NCBI RefSeq assembly: GCF_001194135.2
Contig: NC_068982.1
Location: 29,225,853 to 29,289,852 of the forward strand
DNA length: 64,000 bases
Reading direction: 5' to 3'
Origin: Octopus bimaculoides
Lineage: Eukaryota
Every line of letters starts with the position of its first letter. Position 1 is the first letter of the stretch. Positions 5,711-56,257 of this stretch are shown in pieces. The notes under the pieces are model-generated. The model ran no database searches. It saw only the letters and a list, made by a program, of their open reading frames with translations, and had not been told where the DNA came from. Made by a program: the position numbers and the translations under genes.

Positions 5711-5900
5711 CTAAAGAATAAGCTAAACAAACAAAAGAAACAAAATATTATGTTTACAATGCCTTAATAACAGCAGAGGTTTAAACAAAAATGCCAGCCA
5801 TAAAAAAATATTCAAATTAATATAAATATAGAAATAATACATTTCTAAATCTCTCAGAGAGATTTATGCAGTAGTGATACGATGAAGTAGTTGTATGCTG

Positions 5901-6269
5901 TCAACTTAATGTGACAGTCCCCTGAAGGGAATAATACAACTGTTGGTTAGACCTAGGAAATTGCACTGCTTCCTGTCGGCCTTGACATTTCCTGTGTCCT
6001 TATTTTCACAAAGGGGAGACAAGCACCTCCACCCAGCTAAGCCTGCATCCAGAGACATGTTTCTGAGTCTTTGCTACTCCAGACTGATGACAATCAAAGA
6101 CTCAGAAACATGTCTCTGGATGTAGGCTTAGCTGAGTGGAGGTGCTTGTCTCCCTCTTGTAAACATAAGGACACAGGAAATGTGTCAAGGCCGACAGGAA
6201 GTGGTGCAGCTTCCTAGGTCTAACCAACAGTAGTGTTATTCCCTTCAGGTGACTGTCACATTAAGTTGA
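5901..6269. repeat. Long foldback (inverted repeat, ~173-bp arms, 21-nt loop), MITE-like
   Basis: 5901-6073 is the reverse complement of 6095-6269 at roughly 90% identity by eye. Confidence 0.9.
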
Positions 6270-7297
6270 TAATATAAATATTCTTCAAATCCTGCAGGTA
6301 AACATTATTACCATATTTGTAGATAATGTTTCAGTCTTCTTAATCAATTGATTCTTTATTATTTGTTGAAACATTTCAAAACCAATTTCATGCCATATCT
6401 CATGTTTTATGCTTATGTTTTGATTTCTCATTACTGCTTTGTTTTAAACTTCTTGAAAATCATTGACTGCATTAAAAGTGATTTAAAAGAAAACATTCAC
6501 TCATACACTTATTACAAACATTCACACACATGTAGATGTACACATCTTCCTAAACACCTCCTCTCCACTGTGTTCACCACTCTCCCTGCATTTACCTCTC
6601 CTCTGTCTCCCACTCACTCACCCTGTTCAAGCCTCTGTTTCACTTCACTTCTAGTCACCTCCCTGTCACTTGAGGATATGTCCCAACATATCTTCTTCAC
6701 TAGTTTCTATCACTCTCCGCTCTGTCTCTTTCATTCCTTCTTTCTCTCTCCCTCTCTATTTTTCCAACTGGAGTAGTCATGTATCTCTTCTACAGCAAGG
6801 CACTAATTTTTGTCCTTCTATCATACTCTAACCTCTGATCACCTGGCACAAGACCACTTCCCTCAATACTACTCTCTCCTCAGTTGTGGGTCATGTCTTG
6901 CAAGTTACTTGGTGGCTTTGCCAGTGCCCTGTAAAACCCCCCCAATAAACTCTGTAAAGTGGTTGGCATTAGGAAACCATGCCAATGCAGTCTGATGAGT
7001 ATGATGCAATCTTCCAGTTCATCAGCTCCTGTCAAAACAACCCAACCCATGCCTGCATGGAAAACAAACATCAAATGGTGATTATGTTGATAATGATATA
7101 TATATATATATTCTTTTCTACTCGAGACACAAGGCATGAAATTTTGGGGGAGGGTCCAGTTAATTAGATTGAGCCAAGTATGCAACTGGTACTTAATTTA
7201 TTGACCCTGAAAGGATGAAAGGCAAAGTCGACCTTGGTGGAATAAATATATATATATATAAAGAATAGTATAAATAACTACACATACACAACATGTC

Positions 7298-23615: not shown

Positions 23616-25042
23616 AGATAATCCAGTAAAGTTACTTTAGCAAAGCATCATTGTAAATGACTACTTCTCTGTAGTAACCCCCAAGTTCCAGCACAAATTT
23701 ATGAAAAAATTGAAATTAATGTCTAATAAATGTCTATATCTATTTCCATTTTTATCTCCTCCAGCTTTCCATCCACCATATTTCATAGGCCAGGGTTAGG
23801 GCACTGAAATATTTAATAATAAATCTTTAGACTCCTTAATAATATTATTTAGTTCCCTATAGGATGATTGGCATAGCTGTAACAATTACAATTATAGGCT
23901 AATCAGGCAACTTAAAAATAAAATGTTATAGTAACTAGAATTTACTCCTTTATAATCAAATCCCTCCAGAGAAGATATGGAAAAATGTTCTTGAAAACAT
24001 AAAAGAAATTCTTGCATACTTTTGTATATTGTATACTGGCAGTCCATTGGTTATGACGATGAGAGCTCTAGTTGATCTGATCAATGGAATAACCTGCTTG
24101 TAAACATGTGTACCCTTAATGTAGTTCTCTGGGAGATTCAACATGATACAGAGTGTGACAAGGCTAGCCCTTTACAATACAGCTACTAATCATTTTTGTC
24201 AACTGAGTGGACTGAAACAACATGAAATAAAGTGCCTTGCTCAAGGACACAATGTGTCACCAGGAATTGAACTCACAACCTTACAATCATAAGCTAAATA
24301 CCCTAACCACTAAGCCATGTACCTTCACATATTGTATATTATGGGCTAAGTATTAACGAGAATCTTCCACAAGGTCCAGTCCTAGTTGCAGTATGGTGAC
24401 TAGTGTGCCTTAGAGCTGTGCTAGCAAAGTGCAGCCTCCTGGTGGGGGCCTCTTATGTTGGACAAGTCAAAGGATAGAAGCCATCTCTTCCCACAGGTAA
24501 AAATGGGTTTGCGTAGGGCCAAAACCCCAACATAGGAAAGAGCAAAGTAACAGAAACATCAATGACAATTCAAAACCAACAAGACTTGAGAGAGGGAAAA
24601 CACAGCCAAGATTCAAGATCAGTTGAGAAACGTCATCAATTGTCTATGTTCTATAGGGAGGGAAGGGCTTAAGTGTTCCTGAAAATAGCTTCAAAAGCAA
24701 GACAGAGGGAACTTGTGGTACCTAGTTAGGCAGACACAAAAACTTGAATGTTAAGTGATTTTATTGTAAGTGGCAGAAGATCAAGAAGGTTATAAAGCAG
24801 TAAGGGGAAAAGATAAAATTTCAAAATGTTGGAGATTTAAGATCAACATTGAGAATTTCATGTCAGAAATTTGGAAACAGGGCAATTTAGTTGTGACAAG
24901 TAATTTAGATAATATATCTAAGATCTGAGGGTTGATGTTTTTGATGTAGCAATGAAGTGTAGAATAGCAAAGTTTATTAGAAAAGGAATCACAATTTAGA
25001 CAAAGTATGACTATAGGATATTGAGAAAACTGTTGTATAAGT

Positions 25043-25331: not shown

Positions 25332-27776
25332 AAAGTAAGATATAATACATCCCTGTGCTTACTTACAAATCATTTCATCTCTCTCTCCTCACCCTTTTTA
25401 TACTTTGAAAATATAGCAAGGAACCTGTTGAGTTTCAAACCATAGCTCACAGATTTCCCAGTCCAAAACCATAACCTAACATGTGTGTGTGTGTATGTGT
25501 GTCTGTGTATTCGTGTGTGTTTGAGTATGTAGTCTCTATAACCTTTAGATTTGGGTTTACTGTAATATTATAGAAGATGGGCATTAAAAACGACAATCGC
25601 TATGACTATGATGATGAGGATGACAGCTATGAAGGTGATTATAATCATGTGCATATCGAAGCTTGAATTATTTTTAGTTCACTTTTGTGTGTAAGTTTAT
25701 AAATGTTGTAACAAACATCCAGAAAAATGTCTAGATATTAACCTTTAGGAGATGACAGGGCTGATCTATTGGCCGAAAAGTCAAATGATGACGAAGACTA
25801 TTAGTTCATTGAATATATATAGTTTTATGTAAAGTAATTACATTATCTTCTATAATTTTGTTTGGAAAATGGGTGCATGCCCTCTGTAGGGGTTGTGAAA
25901 AGGGCTCCGTCTTCTTTGCACTGAAACTCCAAATCAGGATTAATAAAACATTATTGAGAGAAACAGTGGCCCCTACTTCCTAATTACAGGAATTCTCCAA
26001 GTCATGGAAGTATTGCGCTCCTGAAAATTTTGCTGTAATGTGGGGTTGTGTAAACAGAAATCCTATTTTTTATTGACTTCTATGTTATATGGAAGTCAAT
26101 AAACATGAAAGAGAATGTGAAAATATGTTCTGTGTAATGAAACTCAATGTTGCAGCAAGACTTTCACAAATGCAAAGCTTCCATAATGCAGGGGATGCTT
26201 GTTCAGTATGTGAGTCTTTCTTCCATTAGTTTGCAAGTTATCTTCATTAAGTATGTGTGTGTAAGAGGGAGAGGGGAGAAGAGAGAGAGAGAGAGTAAGT
26301 GTGTGTGAAGGAGGAGTGCATGAACAGTTAAGGGTTATAACAGTATTTTCTAAACCTGACAAAAGATGCCCAAGCCTAGGGAAGTAACTTAAGTTTTCTA
26401 GCTGACCTGTGTCAGATGTGCTTCTATTTACGTGAACATGTGCATGTATATATNNNNNNNNNNTATATACACAACACTAAATTATGCTCATAATTACACA
26501 CACACATAGACAAAGAAACTGCTCTTAAGTTTGTACTTATTTTGTCAAATGTGATTTTAAAATTTGTTTCTCTTTAACAGAGACTCATAAAAAGAAAATT
26601 CCCTCTCTAGTGGCAGTGCATTGATTAAATGCATCCAGTACACTTGTTAGGTTTTTTCTTTTTATACATAAAATGCCCTCTAAACTGTATGAAAACTTGC
26701 CTTTTAAATGTTGATGATATATGCCTATATATCTATTTTTGAACCAGAAGTAATCCTTTCTATCATAGGCACAAGGCCTGAAATTTTGTTTGGTGTATGT
26801 TTGTGGGGGGAATATTCGATTACATAGACCCCAGTACTCAGCTGGTACTTAATTTATTGACCCCGAAAGGATGAAAGGTAAAGTCGACCTCGGTGGAATT
26901 TGAAGAACCAGAAGTAATGACATCAATGCACATCACAGATCCGTACCATCATAACTGTCACATCTTCATACATAATCTAATGTCTTTAATGCTCAGCCAT
27001 TTTTTTCAGGTCTGCTTATAGTGCTAGTGAAGGGACATGGCTAAGTGGTTAGGGTATTCAACTTACAATCAAAAGGTCGTGAGTTCAATTCCTGGCGATG
27101 CGTTGTGTCCTTGAGCAAGACACTTAATTTCATGTTGCTCCAGTCCAGTCAGCTGGCAAAAATGAGCAGTACCTGTATTTCAAAGGACCAGCCTTGTCAC
27201 ACACTGTGTTACACTGAATTTCCTTGAGAACTACATTAAGGGTATGTATGCTTGTAGAGTACTCAGCCACTAATATATTAATTTCACAAACAGGATGTTC
27301 CATTGATTGGATCAACTAGAACCCTCATCGCCGTAACTGACAGAGTGCTTATTGTGTTAATTAATGCTATCTCTTCAGAAAATCACTCTTAGCTCACTTC
27401 TCCCCAATCTCTGCAGATCTTCTCTATTCAATGCCCATATCTTATTATTATGCAGCATCACATTTATTATATGCCTCCCACCACCACCACTCTAACCCCT
27501 CATTCCCTAGCATAAAACTGTCACCACTTCTTCTCTGAGGGATTGTAGTTTTTTAAGTTGCATGGCAACCTCAAAAGTGCTGGTAGCACAGACAAAGCAT
27601 CTGGGACACACTGTAAAGTGGTTGACATTAGGAAAGACATCCAATTGCAGAAACCATTCCAAAGCCAACACTGGAGCATGAAGCAACCCTTGGACTCATT
27701 GTGTCCTCAAACTGTCCACCTCATGCCAGCACGGAGCACAGATACTAAATGATGATGATGGCCTCTTACAACCTGT

Positions 27777-33430: not shown

Positions 33431-34269
33431 AGAGAGAGAGAGAGTATCCCAATGGCAGAAATGCTACTGTATTTCACTTGACTTAGTGAGGAGGAAAGCC
33501 TGTGCTCACAATGTTTTTATAAGATCTCCAAGACTGATGTGAAAAGAGAACTTGATATCCTCAGGTATTCAAATGCTTACAACATATGGATTCCTTTAAA
33601 AACAGTGATGTTAAACTGGGCTACAGATTAGATCTACTGCTTAATAACAGCTATAGTGCATCTGTCTGGATTTTGTATAGTTTCTGTCTATCCAATATTA
33701 CTCACAAGGTTTGGGTCTATCAAAGACTATGAAAGAAGAAACTTGACCAAAGTTACTTACAGTAGGATTGAACCCAGTATTACAAGATTATGTACTAAAC
33801 TTGTTAACCACATGGCCATGCCTGAATCCATATATATATTTAAATTTGCTCAGTCTTTCATTTTGCAATCATTTCTACCAGAATAATCACCTAAAAATTA
33901 ATCTATAAACATTTAAAGCGGTTATTTAATTTTAAGAATTCACAACCGTAGGTGGTCATTATTATGATGAGAAAATTTGTAAACAAATCCAATCAGGAAA
34001 ATGACTTTTAATTGTATATGAAAAATTATTTCATAACATAGATTTAAAAGTATCTGTATATGGGTTTGTGGAGGCGCGTGGTTTAGTGGTTAAGGTGTCA
34101 GCATCATGATCGCAAGATTGTGGTTTCAATTCCTGGACCAGGCGATGCGTTGTGTTCTTGAGCAAAACACTTCATTTCATGTTGCTCCAGTCCACTCAGC
34201 TGGCAAAAATGAGTAACACTGTGATGGACTGGCGTCCCATCCAGTTGGGGAACACATATGCCATTGAAG

Positions 34270-34470
34270 TTGAAGAAGTGATTTTAAATTCTCAAACGCA
34301 GGATAATGCTAATAATATAACCTGAACAGGATAAGCTACCCCTATTTTGCAGAAAAAAGTGGTTGCGGCTGACTATGAGACTTTTATCTGCAAAATAGGG
34401 GTAGCTTATCCTGTTCATGCTATATTATTAGCATTATCCTGCGTTTGAGAATTTAAAATCACTTCTTTAA
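34270..34470. repeat. Hairpin with ~91-bp arms and 19-nt loop
   Basis: 34270-34360 versus the reverse complement of 34380-34470 shows about 4 mismatches. Confidence 0.92.
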
Positions 34471-35700
34471 TTTTCTAAGATATCTCAACACTTCTAAAGC
34501 AAACTTTGTTTGTTTGCAGTCATCGTAATTTGAATTTAATCTTAAATAAGTTTGCAATTACACAGGAAAGTAATCATTGTTCAGATACAAACTAAAAATT
34601 AGTGAAAGTTCAAGGTGGAGCAATGTCATATCATTAGAAAATATATCTTAGCTTTTACAAAATATACAATTAAACATTTGCCATGTGAGTTATTGTATTT
34701 TCTGTGGATGCTGAGTAGCTAAGATGTTTACGATGCAATTTATAAGGCTCTGAGTTCAACACCACTGTGTAACATTTTGGGCAAATGTATTAATATTGGC
34801 CTTGGGTCAACCCAAGTTTTATGAGTGAACTTGGGTCAACATAAACTGCATAAAAAATTATCAAATGGAATGTACCTGTAATTCAGAGTTCACAGGAACA
34901 CTGGTGTCATGCTTATTTTACCTGAGAATTATGTAAAGAATATCTCAGGAATACTCAGCCACTTCGCAAGTTAATTCAATGAGTAGATTGTCCATTTGAT
35001 CAAACGACTGGGTACTCAAGTGTCAAAATCAACATGAGAGTCCAGCAACGGTAACTGATTAGTATCCAGTATAAGTAGGCAAAAAAGATACTATACTTCT
35101 TAATTACAGTACTGATTAGAACGTCTACTATGAGGGGCATTAACTACATAATAAACAGTCTGTAAACAGCAAATGTAAAACTGCAATATTAAGTACTTGT
35201 TCTAATATCCTAAGATATTCACTGGGATATTAATTCTTTATCATAGTGAGAGATTTATGGTGTCAGCTAATCTCAACCATTCCTCTCTTTTGATACTAAT
35301 CTTCTTAATTATTCCTGACTAGTTCATTAATTACCATTTTTTTTTTTTACATATAATATTTATCCTCTATTCTTATCACATGTATGTATTGGTGTTCTGT
35401 TTTGTATTTGTCTTCAGATGTAATTAAGAATATACGCTGATGTTAAATATCATGTTTACTTAAACAAACATATGAATATTAGTAGATCATTTGAGAAATA
35501 GCTTCTATAAATTTTTAATGTGTATCAACAGTACACGATGAGTGCTATGTTATTTCCAAAGTAAATACATTTCAGTTTCTCCTTCATATTGTCATTGTAA
35601 TCACCACCACCACCACTACCACCTTCACCATCACCATCATCATCATGACCAATAATTTTCTATTTTTTCGAATTTTTGTGAATAACATAGGTTAATACAG

Positions 35701-37077: not shown

Positions 37078-37959
37078 TAATTTTGATTTGAATTTAACAT
37101 TGGCACATACTGGATAGGATAACATAAGAACGCAAGGATATTACAACACAACACAAAATTAACCTCTGTTTAATTAAAAGAATCTGCTCGGATATTTTTT
37201 AGAGCTGTTTTACAGAACATAGAGAGAAGGCATTTGTAAAACACTGTTCAGTGAAAGAAGAACTGTATTACAAAAGGTTGAAAAACACTGGATATATGTT
37301 AGCTTTATCAACCATAGAGAGATGTAATAACATTACTTTTGCAAGGAGATATTTATCTAGAGACTCAAAGTATTAAAAGAAAACTTTTTATGTGTCACTC
37401 AATCATTTTGAAGTGTTAACTGACAGAATCATTATGAGCAACCTGTGGCCTGCAAGACTTTCTTAATGGCAGGCTTAATAAGACATTAAACTGGAACTCC
37501 GTTGGTTACGACAAAGAGGTTTCCAGTTGATCCGATCATTGGAACAACCTGTCTTGAAATTAATGTGCAAATGGCTGAGCACTCCACAGGCATGCGTGCC
37601 CTTAATATAGTTCTCAGGGAGATTCAGCATGACACAGAATGTGATAAGGCTGGCCCTTTGAATTACAAGTATTACTCATTTTTGCCAGCTGAGTGGACTG
37701 GTGCAATGTGAAATAAAGTGTCTTGCTCAAGTTCACAACACATCACCAGGAATCGAACTCGCAATGTTATGATCGTGAGCTGAATACCCTAGCCACTAAG
37801 CCGCGTGCCTTCACCAATGAAATATTATCCTGAATATTTTTAGTAGTGCAACCCACCTGATGATGAGCCATGTCTCATGCTGGCTCTCTTCTCAAGAGAA
37901 GCTGCCCATGTCTGCATTATTGGAAAGAATACCTCACAATATTTATTCTGAGTTTATAT

Positions 37960-41997: not shown

Positions 41998-42390
41998 AAT
42001 GTTGTTGTTGTTGGCACTCCGTCGCTTACGACGTCGAGGGTTCCAGTTGATCTGATCAACGGAACAGCCTGCTCGTGAAATTAACGTGCAAGTGGCTGAG
42101 CACTCCACAGACACGTGTACCCTTAACGTAGTTTCTCGGAGATATTCAGCGTGACACAGTGTGACAAGGCTGACCCTTTGAATTACAGGCACAACAGAAA
42201 CAGGAAGTAAGAGTGAGAGAAAGTTGTGGTGAAAGAGTACAGCAGGGTTCGCCACCATCCCCTGCCGGAGCCTCATGGAGCTTTAGGTGTTTTCGCTCAA
42301 TAAGCACTCACAACGCCCTGTCTGGGAATCGAAACCGCGATCCTATGACCGCGAGTCTACTGCCCTAACCACTGGGCCATTGCGCCTCCA
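41998..42390 (-). mobile_element. tRNA-derived SINE family 2 (ggaggcgc.tggc..agtggttagg head), young CpG-rich copy
   Basis: tRNA-like head with a ggtttcgattccc B box; tail ...cctcgacgtcgtaagcgacggagtg(caa)n. Confidence 0.85.
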
Positions 42391-42547
42391 TGGCAGAAAC
42401 ATAAATACATTAATATCAAAATAAACAAACACATGGGATACCTACAGTAAACACAAAAGTAAATATGTACACACACACACATTTACATGTGAAGGAGCAT
42501 GGCCTAGTGGTTAGGGCATTGCACTCACAATGGCAAGGTCACAGGTA

Positions 42548-42995
42548 CATACTTACAAACTTCTTTTGCGAACAACGAAACAAATGGAAAACAAGACAAG
42601 TAACATAAAGAACGACCCTTCATCAGTTGTCGGCTGTTTATCTACTCCACATTTCGAGCAATAACGACAAGATGTGTCTTCGAGAAAACAGTTGCTCCCG
42701 CAAAGCAAAATAAAATTTGGGATTTGCAGAGGGTCAAAGTTGGTAACAAAAACAGGACAGTGAAAACTGAGCCATAACGAGGTGAGGTGGCGAGTGCTGG
42801 AGGAACAAGCTTTGACAGGAGAAAAGATAGAAGAGGAGACAGACAAGAATGCGTGTAATCCGTGTGGCAGACCAAAAGGAAAGAAAGAAGCACAAGTTGG
42901 GAAAAGAAAGATGGCCAATGGTCACGTGTGAGCGAGAGAGTAAAGGAGGAAGAGTGAGATAGAGAGAGAGAGAGAGACACACACACACACACACA
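42548..42995 (-). mobile_element. CpG-rich repeat carrying the hammerhead motif; possibly a Penelope-like element terminal fragment
   Basis: CpG-rich island in a CpG-poor intron, bounded by a truncated SINE head (about 42490-42545) and a (GA)n(CA)n microsatellite. Hammerheads are typical of Penelope-like terminal repeats; the family assignment is inferred. Confidence 0.45.
42615..42676 (-). ncRNA. Hammerhead ribozyme-like motif with non-circularly permuted strand order
   Basis: Minus strand reads CACAUC-UUGUCG-UUAUU-GCUC-GAAA-UGUG-(15 nt)-CGACAA-CUGAUGA-A-GGGU. Both conserved core motifs are present, with a 6-bp stem I, 5-bp stem III, 4-bp stem II (2 G-U) and an AUC cleavage triplet. Confidence 0.65.
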
Positions 42996-43479
42996 CTAAG
43001 AAGCTGTTTGGGTATTACAAGTATTGAAATTGGTATCAAAATTACTGATGTGTTTGCTTATCAGTAATTATTTGATTATTTATAATCATCTTTTATCTTT
43101 AATTTGTTTCAGTCATTAAACTGCGGCCATGCTGGGGCACTGCCTTGAAGAATCTTAATCGAATGAAACCACGTGGCTGTAAAGTAAGTTTCTTAACCAT
43201 ACAGCAGCCATGCCTGCAGTTACACACATACGCATACACACCACACAAACACACAAGTATGTGTAATAACAGATGTATGGATATAAATTATGAGCTTAGC
43301 TCAACTAAAAACTGAAAGCTAGGGTAAATTCCAAGGAATGGAACAATGGCATATATTTTCCGCCATGTGTAGTTGTTATATTTTTTGCCAAAATTTTAAG
43401 TTACTGTGTCAAACTAAAGACGCATGTCTTTAGCAAAAGCAAAATAAAACTGTTCTGATCCACAAAAGGTGTTTCTATA

Positions 43480-46340: not shown

Positions 46341-46529
46341 TATCTATCTACCTCTATATATTTTGTTTAAAATTTTTTTTTTTTTTGTAAATGTTTTTCT
46401 TTTCCTTTTTCTTTTCCTTCTTTTTTGTTTCCCCCTTGTCAATGAGTAATCAATCAAGCAGCCTGATAAAATATCGGATTGTCCAGCCTTTGTGGTCATC
46501 ACAGACATAAGAGACTGGATCACCGAAAG

Positions 46530-46920
46530 CAACCAGTGATGGCTGTGACAACAGCAGCAATGATGCTGCTGTGTGCTGCTGTGCTGGTGGTGGTGGTGGT
46601 GGCGGTAGCGGTGGAGCTGGCGGCACCAGAGGCGGTGACATCACTAGTATCATCATCATCATCAGCAGCAGCAGCACCGACAACAACAGTAGCATCATCA
46701 ACATCAACCGGGTGTGGCAATGCATGGCTGGCACTTATCATACGGCTTGTTAATGTTTGCGGTAGCAGCAGCGGTGGTGGTGGTGGTGGTGGTGGTAGTA
46801 GTAATAGTAGTAGTAACAGCAGCAGCAGTTGTAGCAGCGTTTACAGCAGCACTACCACATCAACAACAGCAATAACAACAACAACAATGATAATAATAAT
46901 AATAATAATAATCTTGCTTG
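46530..46920. repeat. Mosaic trinucleotide tract (GGT, CAT, CAG, CAA, TAG, AAT)
   Basis: Read directly; explains the low-complexity ORFs here. Confidence 0.85.
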
Positions 46921-47009
46921 TTTGATGTGGAGATCCTAAAGCGCTTCTTTAATTGTAGTGATTGTTGAAATAGCGACTGTTGAGGTTTTTACAAGTTATA
47001 TTCTGAACA

Positions 47010-50226: not shown

Positions 50227-50739
50227 TGTGTGTATGTGAGTATTTACATTCGGGAAATAAAAACAACATAACACTCAGTAATATATAAGTGTGTTTATAT
50301 TATTCTTCCAACATACCCAAACTGACTTACTGCACACTGTATCTGTACCCAGCAGTTTTGGGTGAACTCTGTTTTTACCCCCCAAGAACAGGAAAATATG
50401 CATCGAAGTCATGCTTTTAAGCAAAAGACACCGAAACACAAAAGGCAAGTCAAGTTATTGAAACTCATGTGGGTGGTAGTGATCGAGATAGCAATGGTTT
50501 CTATGTGAAATAATATTATCCATAGGCAGTGTTAGACATGGAATTATTCTGCTAAGCTATCTTTAACAATATTAAATAAAGAAAAATTACAAGAATTCAG
50601 GATTAAAAAAACCCAAAAAACAAAGAAACTTTGAAACCAAGAGCAGAAGTTACTTCTGCTTACTGTCAAGTTTTCATTCTACTAAATTTTAAATTGCTTT
50701 TTAATGAAAAATTTAATAATAATAATAATAATAATAATA

Positions 50740-52150
50740 ATCCTTTTTGCTGCAGGCACAAGGCCCGATATTTGGGCGAGGGGAGCCTAGTTGATTACAT
50801 CAACCCTAGTATTCCACTGATTCTTATTTCAATGACCCCAAAGGGATAAAAAAGCAAAGTTGACCTTGTTGGCGGAATTTGAACTCAGAACATAAGAACA
50901 GACAAAATGCTAATGATCCTGCTAGCTTGTCACCTTATTAATAATAACAATAATAATGATGATATCAAATTTTGGTACAGGGCCAGCAGGTTTAAGGGAG
51001 TGGGGTAAGTCTATCTCGGTGTTCAACTGGTACTTTCTTCATTGATCCCAAAAGGATGAAAGGGAAAGTTGACCGCAACGGAATTTGAACTCAGAATTTA
51101 AAGACAGACAAAATGCAGCTAAACATTTTGCCAGGCATGCTAACCATTCAGTCAGCTTGCCACCTTAATAATAATAATAATAATAATAATCCTTTCTACT
51201 ATAGGCACAAGACCTGAAATTTGTGGGGAAGAGATTAATCAATTACATCAACCCAAGTGTTACACATTCTATTCATTTCCCAGCAAAAAGAGGTGAGCCC
51301 CGTACTATGCTCAGGTCATGGCATAGAATGCAGCCCCCAATATCAGCAGTGGGACCCAACAGTATATGTTGGTTTACCCCCGCCTCGTCATGCTGGTTCT
51401 GTACCCCCTTGAGTAACATCAAATTCACTCATCTGTCCACAAGCACTCTCCAAGCTTTCCTAATAAAAATTATATTAAGTATAATTCATTCTACTGTACG
51501 CACAAGGCCTGAAATTTGGGGATAGGGACAAGTTGATAACATTGATCCCCAGTATTTAGCTGGTATTTTTATTTTGTCAACTCTAAAAGGATGAACGGCA
51601 AAGTCAACCTTGGTGGAATTTGAACTGAGAACATAAAGCTAGAAGAAACGCTGCTAAGTATTTTGTCTGGTGCAGTAATGATTCTGAGAGCTGCCTTCAT
51701 AATAATACTGATAATAATGATAATAATAATAATGGTTTCTGATTTAGATATAAAACCAAAGATCCTGCAGGGAAGGTGTTAGCCAATTACATTGACCTCC
51801 AGATGATGAAAGACTAAGTTGACCATGGTGGAATTTGAGTTCATAATGGGACGAATCAGAAGAAATGCTGCTAAGAATATTGTCTGACACAGTAACAATT
51901 CTGCCAGCCCGCTACCTTAATAATAATAATATTATTATTATATTTCTTTCTACAATATGCACAAGACCTGAAATGTTATGGGAAGGGGAACTAGTTGATT
52001 ACATTGAACCCAGGGCTCAACTGGTACTTATTTTATTGATCCTGAATGGATGAAAAGCAAAGTTGTTCCTGGCAGGATTTGAACTCGAAACAAAAAGAGC
52101 TGGAAGAAATATGATGAAGCATTTTGTCCAATGCTCTAACAATCCTGAAT
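50740..52150 (-). mobile_element. Head-to-tail array of about six family-3 SINE copies separated by (AAT)n
   Basis: Recurrent cacaagg...gattacat...aaggatgaa..gcaaagttgacc...gaatttgaactcagaa units about every 220-270 bp. Confidence 0.85.
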
Positions 52151-54444: not shown

Positions 54445-55404
54445 ATATATATATATATATATTATATATATGTGTGTGTGTGTGTATACAGATATACACA
54501 AATATATGAATGTATACACCTACACATACACATTAACAATACCCAATCTTCTGTGGTATTTGCTCTGAGTGTTTTATTTCCTCCTGATTTATTATGCCAA
54601 TCAGCAGTTTTATAGCCAACCTATTATTTGTATATGCATTTCGCAATGATAACTTATGACAACATAATCATCATCATCATCGTCATCACAACAATAACTA
54701 CCACTGCATTACTCACTATTGCTTATAGGTTCAGCAACAGGCATTAAGTCCAGCCTCCTTTTGACATTATCATCAACCTACACAAATCCCACTCAATTCC
54801 AGATGGTGATATTTTGATTTAAAATGTTTAAACTATTGCATTATATTTATAGAATCAATAACATATTTTCAACCCCTGTCAACGAAATTTTAGGAAAATT
54901 TTCCCGGATTTAATATAAACATACGTATGTATACACACTTTTACCCTCACACATAACAACTCACACACGCAGAATGTAAACAATAACATGGACCGAAGTT
55001 AACTTGTAGTAGATGATTAATTATTAAATATAAAAAGTTTTTTTTTTCTGTGAATGAAAATGACGGCAATCAATTTCTGTTATCTTATCTATACCATACA
55101 AATGATAACTTTCAAACTATGATATTGTAAATGACAAATATTAGTCAGTCTTTATAGGGATTTCTTTATGTAATAAAAAAGATATTTTCCGTGATAATGG
55201 TGGGAGCTGGGGTGGTGGTGCAGTTAATTACTTATTCTCTCATCAATTGAAATAGCAGTATTAATAGTTATATACACTAGTCCTTACCATATTACTTGAA
55301 GAAAGAAATAAGGTTAAGAAATTAGAAATATAAAGAATTGGTTAATATTTAAAAGTAACAAGTTTGGTCCAAAACAAGAACATAATAATAACAATAATTA
55401 TTAT

Positions 55405-55875
55405 AATGGTTTCAAATTTTGCCACAAGGACAGCAATTTTGGGGAAGGTGCTGAGTTGATTAAATCGATCCCAGTGCTTAACTGGTACTTCTTTTATTGA
55501 CACCGAAAGAATGAAAGGTAAAGCCGACCTCAGCGGAGTTTGAACTCAGAATGTAGCAACGGGCGGAATACCGCTAAACATTTCGTCTGGTTCGCTAACG
55601 ATTCTGCCAACTCGCTACCTTAATAATAATAATAGTAATAATAACAATGATGATGATAATAATTCTCTCTACTATAAGCACAAGACTTGAAATTTTGGGA
55701 TGGTGTAGTACTTGATTACATTAACCCACATCAATCAACTAATACTTATTTTACTGACCCCGAAAGAAGGAAAAACAAAGATGACCTCAGTGGAATTTGA
55801 ACTCAGAACATAAAGCCGAAAGAAATGCCGCTAGCATTTTGTCCAGTGTGCTAACAATTCTGCCAGCTCACCACC

Positions 55876-55916
<41 letters not shown>

Positions 55917-56257
55917 AATCCTTTCTACTATCGGCACAAGACCTGAAACTTTGCAGGGAGGGGACTAGTCAATTATATCAACCCCAACGATTCACTGGTA
56001 CTTAATTTATCGACCCCCGAAAGGATAAAAAGCAAAGTCAATCTCGGTGGAATTTGAACTCAGACCATAAAGACAGAAGAAATAACACTAAGCATTTCAC
56101 CCGGCGTGCTAACGATTCTGCCAGCCTCACTATTTTAATAATAATAATAATATTTGGGGGAGGGGGCAAGTCGATTAGATCGACCTCAGTACGCAACTGG
56201 TACTTAATTTATCGACTCCGAAAGGATGAAATGCGAAGTCGACCGTCGACCTCGGCG

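What the first reader, a model, noticed from the sequence alone, without database searches (positions are those of the whole stretch)
42615..42676. Hammerhead ribozyme core with non-circularly permuted strand order, on the RasGRF pre-mRNA strand
Seen: the minus strand reads 5'-CACAUC|UUGUCG-UUAUU-GCUC-GAAA-UGUG-GAGUAGAUAAACAGC-CGACAA-CUGAUGA-A-GGGU. CUGAUGA (42626-42620) and GAAA (42655-42652) are intact. Stem I UUGUCG/CGACAA is 6 perfect bp starting right after H17 and right before C3. Stem III CACAU/AUGUG is 5 bp with an AUC triplet (predicted cut between 42671 and 42670). Stem II GGGU/GCUC is 4 bp with 2 G-U. Established: hammerhead types I-III are circular permutations of the order CUGAUGA-strand, GAAA-strand, NUH-strand; an extra A between A9 and G10.1 is known from the CChMVd viroid hammerhead. 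Here the order is reversed (NUH, GAAA, CUGAUGA), which needs a pseudoknotted topology. Inference: the 5-nt linker joins the distal ends of stems I and II, which lie close together in the hammerhead fold, so it looks sterically plausible. Non-circular hammerhead permutations have been reported from comparative searches; I cannot check whether this family is among them. If active, it would cut the RasGRF intron co-transcriptionally.
Basis: partly seen in the sequence, partly recalled or inferred. Interest (0 to 1): 0.9.

Follow-up and report, generated by a model that had tools for sequence, protein, structure and literature searches.

The report
Hammerhead-like motif, probably a chance match
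A 62-base stretch inside an intron of an animal signalling gene carries every core letter of a hammerhead self-cutting RNA in a rearranged order already known from soil RNA replicons, but nothing beyond the letters shows that it works, so it is most likely a coincidence that one cheap bench test could settle.

Summary
On the minus strand, 42676-42615 reads CACAUC|UUGUCG-UUAUU-GCUC-GAA-AUGUG-(15 nt)-CGACAA-CUGAUGA-A-GGGU.

The block order (cleavage site, GAAA, CUGAUGA) is not new. It is the "type SGC" hammerhead of Eckert et al. 2023. Their 583 sequences all come from metatranscriptome RNA with hairpin ribozymes on the opposite strand.

The candidate meets the minimal definition:
- all core nucleotides are present, including G10.1-C11.1 and A15.1-U16.1;
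- stems I, II and III have 6, 4 and 5 bp;
- a short linker joins stems I and II;
- there is one extra base after A9, as in validated SGC-1 and SGC-3.

It is weak elsewhere:
- stem II has 2 G-U pairs in 4;
- the required fourth helix is only an imperfect A-U/G-U pairing, no better than 18% of controls;
- a nested hairpin of -14.2 kcal/mol competes with stems II and III.

It is single-copy in the window, has no Rfam hit, and no orthologue could be fetched.

A match this good is expected about 3e-5 times per window. That is roughly one per genome of a few gigabases.

Verdict: probably a chance match (about 0.8). Real self-cleavage is not excluded (about 0.15-0.2), and a biological role is unlikely (about 0.05).

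The parts
42672..42676 (-). Proposed stem III, 3' strand (16.5-16.1), CACAU
   Evidence: It gives 5 Watson-Crick pairs with AUGUG at 42652-42648, including A15.1-U16.1. Duplex energy is -2.9 kcal/mol.
42671..42671 (-). C17, predicted cleavage site (cut between 42671 and 42670), triplet AUC
   Evidence: AUC is catalytically good but 'essentially absent' from natural hammerheads (PMC1636495). Validated SGC-3 nevertheless cuts after AUC.
42665..42670 (-). Proposed stem I, 5' strand (1.1-1.6), UUGUCG
   Evidence: It gives 6 Watson-Crick pairs with CGACAA at 42632-42627. Duplex energy is -5.5 kcal/mol. This is the only proposed stem that the nested ensemble also predicts (P 0.71-1.0).
42660..42664 (-). 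Linker UUAUU between stem I and stem II strands
   Evidence: It is 5 nt long, against 'typically three' in type SGC and 3 and 2 nt in SGC-1 and SGC-3. In the nested MFE it pairs with AUAA of the 15-nt linker.
42656..42659 (-). Proposed stem II, 3' strand (11.4-11.1), GCUC
   Evidence: It gives 4 pairs with GGGU at 42618-42615, two of them G-U; G10.1-C11.1 is kept. Duplex energy is only -1.5 kcal/mol, against -7.1 and -4.8 in SGC-1 and SGC-3. In the MFE it pairs with GAGU of the 15-nt linker instead.
42648..42655 (-). G12 A13 A14 (42655-42653) and stem III 5' strand AUGUG (42652-42648)
42633..42647 (-). 15-nt linker GAGUAGAUAAACAGC between stem III and stem I strands; possible strand of a fourth helix, and also the 3' arm of the competing hairpin
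   Evidence: it can pair with 42613-42598 at -6.8 kcal/mol, in the register of the SGC-1/-3 pseudoknot, but 18% of same-geometry controls do as well; in the nested MFE it pairs with UUAUUGCUC.
42627..42632 (-). Proposed stem I, 3' strand (2.6-2.1), CGACAA
42620..42626 (-). Core C3-A9, CUGAUGA
   Evidence: It is one of 29 CTGANGA sites in the window. In the MFE, G5-G8 pair with CAUC at 42674-42671.
42619..42619 (-). Extra A between A9 and G10.1
   Evidence: stem II exists only with this 1-nt insertion. Precedents are A10 of CChMVd (+) and the extra U in SGC-1 and SGC-3.
42615..42618 (-). Proposed stem II, 5' strand (10.1-10.4), GGGU
42598..42613 (-). Possible partner of the 15-nt linker (fourth helix), GUUCUUUAUGUUACUU
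   Evidence: The pairing is AGC/GUU, a C-C mismatch, AUAAA/UUUAU, a bulged G, then GAGUAG/UUACUU. It is not significant (P about 0.18), with only 3 contiguous pairs from the junction against 6 in validated ribozymes.

Best explanation
This is a chance occurrence of the minimal type-SGC hammerhead consensus in unique, non-coding sequence. The sequence lies in a long intron of a DH-PH (RasGRF-like) exchange-factor gene, between SINE fragments. The transcript most likely folds into an ordinary imperfect hairpin. That hairpin keeps the 'stem I' pairing and uses the stem II strand, the linkers, the cleavage-site triplet and G5-G8 of the core for other pairs, so the RNA does not cut itself at a meaningful rate and has no ribozyme function.

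Shown: the motif, its expected frequency, the competing fold, the weak stems and the absence of copies in the window.

Inferred: that it is inactive.
For: - A match of this quality is expected about 3.4e-5 times per window, which is about one per genome of a few gigabases. Relaxed matches are expected about 6e-4 times per window. Other CTGANGA sites in the window reach 11-12 of the candidate's 15 bp.
- Duplex energies are -1.5 kcal/mol for stem II and -2.9 for stem III. The validated ribozymes have -7.1 and -7.1 (SGC-1) and -4.8 and -4.5 (SGC-3).
- The nested MFE of the 62-mer is -14.2 kcal/mol and excludes stems II and III. The 91-mer folds no better than shuffled sequence (z = +0.46).
- The fourth helix is required for SGC-3 cleavage. 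Here it is an interrupted A-U/G-U pairing matched by 18% of controls.
- Rfam gives no hit at gathering score in the window, and no ribozyme family up to E = 10 locally.
- There is no second copy in the window. No relative was found in protein-indexed assemblies or in metagenomes.
- All 583 known type-SGC ribozymes come from metatranscriptome RNA with a hairpin ribozyme on the opposite strand. The authors also searched all of RefSeq and warn of false positives unless covariation is shown.
- A 20-22-base partial SGC pattern gave 34 and more than 118 plainly fortuitous matches in metagenome and viral contigs.
Against: - For this single window the match is improbable (3e-5 to 6e-4).
- Every invariant core position is intact, including G10.1-C11.1, A15.1-U16.1 and H17 = C.
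- The block order, the short stem I to stem II linker and the extra base after A9 all mirror validated SGC-1 and SGC-3.
- A fourth helix of nominally equal energy (-6.8 kcal/mol) can be drawn in exactly the right register.
- My rough sum of stacking energies against pseudoknot penalties does not exclude the hammerhead fold. That sum is inference.
- The motif is on the transcribed strand.
- No comparative or biochemical test could be run, so inactivity is not shown.
Confidence: 0.8

Rival explanations
1. The sequence is an accidental but catalytically competent type-SGC hammerhead. It cleaves slowly at C42671 in vitro at high Mg2+, but it arose by chance, is not conserved and has no role in the gene.
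For: - The core is complete and all three stems are present.
- A possible fourth helix lies in the right register.
- Hammerheads arise easily in selection experiments, as Eckert et al. discuss.
- The single type-GCS example they tested cleaved despite having no covariation support.
Against: - Stem II is very weak and there is a competing hairpin.
- Disrupting any one of the four helices abolished cleavage of SGC-3.
- In the MFE the AUC triplet pairs with GAUG of the core. This is the kind of inactive metastable fold proposed to explain why AUC is avoided in nature.
Confidence: 0.12
2. The sequence is a genuine, selected type-SGC hammerhead encoded in an animal genome. It cuts the nascent intron of the exchange-factor pre-mRNA co-transcriptionally, for example to modulate transcript output or to release an intronic RNA. 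This would parallel the conserved intronic hammerheads of amniotes.
For: - The motif is on the sense strand, 11.8 kb upstream of the next mapped exon.
- The per-window chance probability is low.
- The architecture is parallel to validated type SGC.
Against: - There is no evidence of conservation, copies or expression.
- The helices are marginal.
- Every known type-SGC ribozyme sits in an RNA replicon.
- Known animal hammerheads are type I in retrozymes and Penelope-like elements (PMC7229834) or type III in introns, and Rfam finds none here.
Confidence: 0.05
3. The motif belongs to the body of a mobile element, antisense to a SINE whose tRNA-like head starts at 42489 on the plus strand and whose tail is the (GA)n(CA)n run at 42960-42997. 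Under this reading it has many copies elsewhere in the genome, as schistosome or retrozyme hammerheads do.
For: - A 52-nt SINE-head fragment at 42489-42540 matches heads at 27027, 24330, 53930 and 16626.
- A microsatellite lies where a tail would be.
Against: - 42541-42960 matches nothing else in a window that holds several copies of that SINE family, even with sensitive settings.
- The head fragment lacks the B-box part seen in the full copy at 42003-42385.
- The motif would be on the antisense strand of such an element.
Confidence: 0.03

Closest known systems
Type-SGC hammerhead ribozymes (HRIMA-1 motif and type-SGC variants; Eckert, Friedrich, Weinberg & Weinberg, NAR 2023, PMC10085705)
   Same: - The 5'-to-3' block order is identical: cleavage-site block, GAAA block, CUGAnGA block.
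- All core nucleotides are present.
- Stem I has 5-6 bp.
- Stem I is joined directly to stem II by a short linker.
- There is one extra nucleotide between A9 and stem II.
- SGC-3 also cuts after AUC.
   Different: - Known members come only from RNA (soil, spruce, sludge and freshwater metatranscriptomes), with a hairpin ribozyme on the other strand. This one is in nuclear DNA of an animal, inside an intron.
- Known stem II has 5 Watson-Crick pairs and stem III 6-7 bp. Here stem II has 4 bp with 2 G-U and stem III has 5 bp.
- The known linker between stem III and stem I is a 6-nt strand of a clean 6-bp fourth helix. Here it is 15 nt with only an interrupted A-U/G-U pairing.
- The stem I to stem II linker is 5 nt rather than 2-3 nt.
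- There is no covariation evidence.
Intronic hammerheads of amniotes (HH9, HH10; type III)
   Same: This comparison rests on my own knowledge of de la Pena and Garcia-Robles 2010.
   Different: Those are canonical type III and are ultraconserved across species. They are represented in Rfam, which finds nothing here. No conservation could be shown for this motif.
Type I hammerheads of metazoan retrozymes and Penelope-like elements (PMC7229834; bioRxiv 10.64898/2026.07.22.740005)
   Same: They are hammerhead motifs encoded in invertebrate genomes, including molluscs.
   Different: Those are type I, occur in tandem or dispersed repeats and give rise to circular RNAs. This motif is single-copy in the window, is not tandem and has a different topology.
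CChMVd (+) hammerhead with extra A10
   Same: An extra A lies between A9 and G10.1 (PMC1636495).
   Different: It is a type III viroid ribozyme. There the A10 moderately lowers the cleavage rate and is kept for a role in the viroid's global fold.

Membership tests
Type-SGC hammerhead (Eckert et al. 2023) | Block order S (site), G (GAAA), C (CUGAnGA), with no interruption inside a block beyond 1-2 nt | tested here: met
   The only insertion is one A after A9. SGC-1 and SGC-3 have one U there.
Type-SGC hammerhead (Eckert et al. 2023) | All conserved core nucleotides: C3 U4 G5 A6 N7 G8 A9, G12 A13 A14, A15.1-U16.1, H17 | tested here: met
   G10.1-C11.1 is also present.
Type-SGC hammerhead (Eckert et al. 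2023) | Stems I, II and III all able to form | tested here: inconclusive
   The stems have 6, 4 (2 G-U) and 5 bp. Stems II and III have duplex energies of only -1.5 and -2.9 kcal/mol, against -4.5 to -7.1 in validated ribozymes, and a nested hairpin of -14.2 kcal/mol competes with them.
Type-SGC hammerhead (Eckert et al. 2023) | Short linker (typically 3 nt) from stem I to stem II | tested here: met
   The linker is 5 nt, longer than the typical 3 nt but still short.
Type-SGC hammerhead (Eckert et al. 2023) | Fourth helix joining the other sides of stems I and II, required for cleavage of SGC-3 | tested here: inconclusive
   An interrupted 14-pair A-U/G-U duplex (42647-42633 with 42613-42598) lies in the right register at -6.8 kcal/mol. 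However, 18% of same-geometry controls do as well, and only 3 pairs are contiguous from the junction against 6 in SGC-1 and SGC-3.
Type-SGC hammerhead (Eckert et al. 2023) | Covariation in the stems among homologues | not testable with these tools
   No homologue could be retrieved. The collections that can be searched by DNA hold no eukaryotic genomes.
Type-SGC hammerhead (Eckert et al. 2023) | Site-specific self-cleavage abolished by a G5 mutation | not testable with these tools
   This is a bench experiment.
Type-SGC hammerhead (Eckert et al. 2023) | Context: RNA-only sequences with a hairpin ribozyme on the opposite strand | tested here: not met
   The motif is in genomic DNA, in an intron. 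No hairpin or other ribozyme family was found in the window. The known context is given.
Canonical hammerheads (types I, II, III, HH9, HH10 in Rfam) | Match to an Rfam hammerhead covariance model | tested here: not met
   There are no matches at gathering score in the window. No hammerhead family appears up to E = 10 in 42300-43100. This is expected for a permuted order.
Metazoan retrozyme / Penelope-like-element hammerheads | Type I motif in tandem or dispersed repeats | tested here: not met
   The motif is single-copy in the window and not tandem, and its topology is SGC.

The most novel reading that the evidence does not exclude
This is a working type-SGC (non-circularly permuted, doubly pseudoknotted) hammerhead encoded in the nuclear genome of an animal. 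It sits on the sense strand of an intron of a RasGRF-like gene and cleaves the nascent pre-mRNA after C42671. It would be the first DNA-encoded and first eukaryotic member of a class known only from environmental RNA replicons.
Probability: 0.05. Interest if true: 0.85.

Novelty: not a real feature. Interest (0 to 1): 0.25.

Why it matters
If the motif were active and conserved, it would move non-circularly permuted hammerheads from viroid-like RNAs of soil metatranscriptomes into animal genes. It would also add a second, independent kind of intronic hammerhead, and it would show that such topologies can arise in cellular genomes.

As things stand, the finding mainly shows how a complete minimal hammerhead consensus in one particular block order turns up by chance about once per large genome. 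It also shows why the discoverers of the class accepted only candidates with covariation.

The decisive tests are cheap: one BLASTN against related genomes and one transcription assay.

Tried and rejected
1. Rfam, at gathering score over the whole window and at E <= 10 over 42300-43100: no ribozyme. ARAGORN: no tRNA.

2. Paralogues in the window, by blastn with words of 9 and 7 bases and by nhmmer: none for 42541-42960. Only the flanking SINE pieces repeat.

3. Orthologues via reading frames. I queried the 121-aa ORF that covers the motif, then a six-frame concatenation of 42541-42935 at E <= 10. Neither found anything.
   - The same route did find contigs of a related species for a PH-domain exon (L001 and L002 from runs SRR11869394 and SRR11869391). 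These are 94% identical to the window in the exon and 80% in the intron.
   - A suitable relative therefore exists, but its copy of this intron cannot be reached with these tools.

4. An exact-pattern scan of metagenome contigs for the G and C blocks of the candidate: 0 matches.

5. An attempt to collect real HRIMA-1/type-SGC members to build a covariance model. Pattern scans of metagenome contigs (34 matches) and viral contigs (more than 118 matches) returned only fortuitous matches on long DNA contigs. No model was built.

6. A PDB sequence search with the spliced PH peptide: uninformative.

7. A canonical hammerhead around the same CUGAUGA: rejected on reading the sequence, because no GAAA follows downstream within about 60 nt.

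8. An inflated helix frequency in real sequence as a source of the match: rejected. High-complexity real sequence gives fewer three-helix arrangements than the Markov model.

9. I first noted the fourth helix as absent. After a geometry-matched control I corrected this to inconclusive.

Full report
**What is there**

Read on the minus strand, window 42676-42615 is CACAUC|UUGUCG-UUAUU-GCUC-GAA-AUGUG-GAGUAGAUAAACAGC-CGACAA-CUGAUGA-A-GGGU. A descriptor I wrote for this block order finds this locus and no other on either strand.

- Stem I (UUGUCG/CGACAA) has 6 Watson-Crick pairs.
- Stem III (CACAU/AUGUG) has 5, including A15.1-U16.1.
- Stem II (GGGU/GCUC) has 4, two of them G-U, and keeps G10.1-C11.1. 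It exists only if one A is left unpaired after A9.

**What the arrangement is called**

The order cleavage-site block, GAAA block, CUGAnGA block is not unprecedented. Eckert, Friedrich, Weinberg and Weinberg (NAR 2023, PMC10085705) divided the hammerhead into blocks S, G and C and showed that the non-circular order SGC occurs in nature.

- They report 407 HRIMA-1 sequences and 176 variants.
- There is covariation in all stems, and cleavage occurs at the predicted site.
- Cleavage is lost on a G5 mutation and on disruption of any of four helices, and is rescued by compensatory changes.
- In that class stem I is joined to stem II by a linker of typically 3 nt. A fourth helix ties together the other sides of stems I and II.

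I rebuilt SGC-1 and SGC-3 from the published oligonucleotides:

- SGC-1: ...CUACUGUC|AUGUU-UCA-GGACC-GAAA-CAGUGG-AGAGAG-AACAU-CUGAUGA-U-GGUCC-G-CUCUCU...
- SGC-3: ...AGCAAUC|UGUGAU-UA-GUGUC-GAAA-UUGCU-UACGUG-AUCAUA-CUGAUGA-U-GACAC-AA-CACGUA...

Both carry one extra base after CUGAUGA, as the candidate does. That paper also notes that the triplet AUC is essentially absent from natural hammerheads, although SGC-3 uses it.

All known type-SGC sequences come from RNA, namely metatranscriptomes of soil, spruce litter, sludge and fresh water, with a hairpin ribozyme on the opposite strand. No other paper in the library uses the term.

**How the candidate compares**

It meets the minimal definition: block order, core, three stems and a short linker. 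It is weaker in the following respects.

- Duplex energies are -5.5, -1.5 and -2.9 kcal/mol for stems I, II and III. For stems II and III, SGC-1 has -7.1 and -7.1 and SGC-3 has -4.8 and -4.5.
- In the validated ribozymes, the segment between stem III and stem I is just the 6-nt strand of a clean 6-bp fourth helix. Here it is 15 nt.
- That 15-nt segment can pair with the 16 nt that follow stem II (42613-42598). The register is right and the nominal energy is the same (-6.8 kcal/mol).
- The pairing is A-U/G-U rich and is interrupted by a mismatch and a bulge. In same-geometry samples from the window, 18% do as well. Only 3 pairs are contiguous from the junction, against 6 in SGC-1 and SGC-3. I rate this feature inconclusive.

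**Competing fold**

Without pseudoknots, the 62-mer folds at -14.2 kcal/mol into one imperfect hairpin.

- It keeps stem I.
- It pairs UUAUUGCUC with GAGUAGAUAA.
- It pairs CAUC (the cleavage-site triplet) with GAUG (G5-G8 of the core).
- Stems II and III have zero probability in this ensemble.

The 91-mer is no more stable than shuffled sequence (z = +0.46). A rough sum of stacking energies against pseudoknot penalties puts the hammerhead fold at or below the stability of this hairpin. That sum is inference and does not exclude the hammerhead fold.

**Chance**

I used 8 million simulated CTGANGA contexts under a first-order Markov model of the window.

- The relaxed descriptor matches with P = 2.25e-5. 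With 27.5 expected sites per window (29 observed), that is about 6e-4 per window.
- Matches with at least 15 bp and at most 2 G-U have P = 1.25e-6, about 3.4e-5 per window.
- For a 2.7-Gb genome (an assumed size) this means about 26 relaxed and about 1.4 equal-quality chance matches for this one block order.
- Allowing all six orders and free linkers would multiply these figures by roughly 15. That factor is extrapolated from the number of placements and was not simulated.

High-complexity real sequence shows fewer three-helix arrangements than the model, so the null is not too lenient. Within the window the candidate heads a continuous distribution of 15 bp, then 12, 11, 11 and 11. Partial SGC patterns of 20-22 specified bases gave 34 and more than 118 obviously fortuitous matches in metagenome and viral contigs. 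The discoverers of the class state that pattern matches are expected to include false positives and accepted only candidates with covariation.

**Context**

The window is AT-rich (about 33% G+C) and full of microsatellites, SINE copies and assembly gaps.

- The motif lies in 42541-42960, which has no other copy in the window even with sensitive settings.
- That segment is flanked by a SINE on the minus strand (about 42003-42385), a 52-nt SINE-head fragment (42489-42540, plus strand) and a (GA)n(CA)n run (42960-42997).
- Three minus-strand exons (30852-30694, 9408-9340, 5618-5511) together encode a PH domain. Pfam PH scores 31.1 bits and SOS1_NGEF_PH scores 29.6 bits, both above their cut-offs.
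- A relative has a RhoGEF domain immediately before this PH domain (P0003).
- The peptide resembles the second PH domain of RasGRF as I recall it. That is memory, not a test.
- No upstream exon was found between 31 kb and the end of the window. The motif is therefore 11.8 kb upstream of the next exon on the sense strand, presumably inside an intron longer than 33 kb. That the region is transcribed is inferred.

**Comparative evidence**

This would be decisive and could not be obtained. The collections searchable by DNA hold no eukaryotic genomes. The protein-indexed route found contigs of a related species for one exon, with 94% identity in the exon and 80% in the intron. It found nothing for the motif region in any reading frame. 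An exact-pattern scan of metagenomes also found nothing.

**Verdict**

It corresponds to a published, validated class. Evidence that this copy is a ribozyme is lacking:

- stems II and III are marginal;
- the fourth helix is not significant;
- an ordinary hairpin competes with the hammerhead fold;
- the context is foreign to the class;
- no copies or orthologues were found;
- the chance expectation is about one per large genome.

My estimates are:

- about 0.8 that it is a fortuitous, inactive match;
- about 0.12 that it cleaves detectably in vitro without biological meaning;
- about 0.05 that it is a genuine intronic type-SGC hammerhead;
- about 0.03 that it belongs to a repeat family.

The last-but-one reading would be remarkable. 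It can be tested with one BLASTN against related genomes and one transcription assay.

Noticed in passing
window 5830-6319: About 490 bp present in the window is absent from the orthologous contig of a related species: L001 aligns to 6967-6320 and then to 5829-5472. The extra segment coincides with nested inverted repeats (5883-5987/6183-6287 and 5985-6073/6095-6183, 87-93% complementary). It looks like a recent insertion of a foldback (MITE-like) element next to a PH-domain exon.
   Followed up: partly
window 34267-34473: A near-perfect hairpin: 94-nt arms, 95% complementary, 19 nt between them. Its nature is unknown.
   Followed up: no
window 30852-30694, 9408-9340, 5618-5511 (minus strand): Three exons that together encode a SOS1/NGEF-like PH domain of a DH-PH exchange factor (RasGRF-like). 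The introns between them are 21 kb and 3.7 kb long.
   Followed up: yes
window 42003-42385 (minus); also 27027-27348, 37492-37814, 24037-24330: Copies of a SINE of about 330-380 bp with a tRNA-like head (TGGCCCAGTGGTTAGGGC...) and a (TGT)n/(ACA)n tail. They are 78-83% identical to one another. ARAGORN calls none of them a tRNA.
   Followed up: partly
window 50717-52109 and 55383-56125: Clusters of a second repeat family of about 250 bp (ACTGGTACTT...GGAATTTGAACTCAGAAC). Each unit is preceded by (AAT)n or (GAT)n runs. The units are spaced about 257 bp apart at 55.4-56.1 kb, so they are locally tandem (families D19 and D20).
   Followed up: no
window 43037-43076 (plus strand): A short perfect hairpin (TTACTGATGTG...TTATCAGTAATT) scores 22.4 bits against mir-7927 (E = 0.069), far below the gathering score of 75. 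It is probably chance.
   Followed up: no
window 46450-46925: Long overlapping open reading frames on both strands in a low-complexity stretch: proline-rich on the minus strand and Ser/Thr/Gly-rich on the plus strand. The minus-strand frame has no Pfam match. Whether this is an exon of the same gene is unknown.
   Followed up: partly
window, e.g. about 9.6-9.8 kb, 13.6-14.0 kb, 27.85-27.88 kb, 40.6-40.7 kb, 60.6-61.0 kb: 1251 N bases in assembly gaps, each flanked by microsatellites. The window comes from a draft short-read assembly, so sequence and copy number around repeats are uncertain.
   Followed up: no
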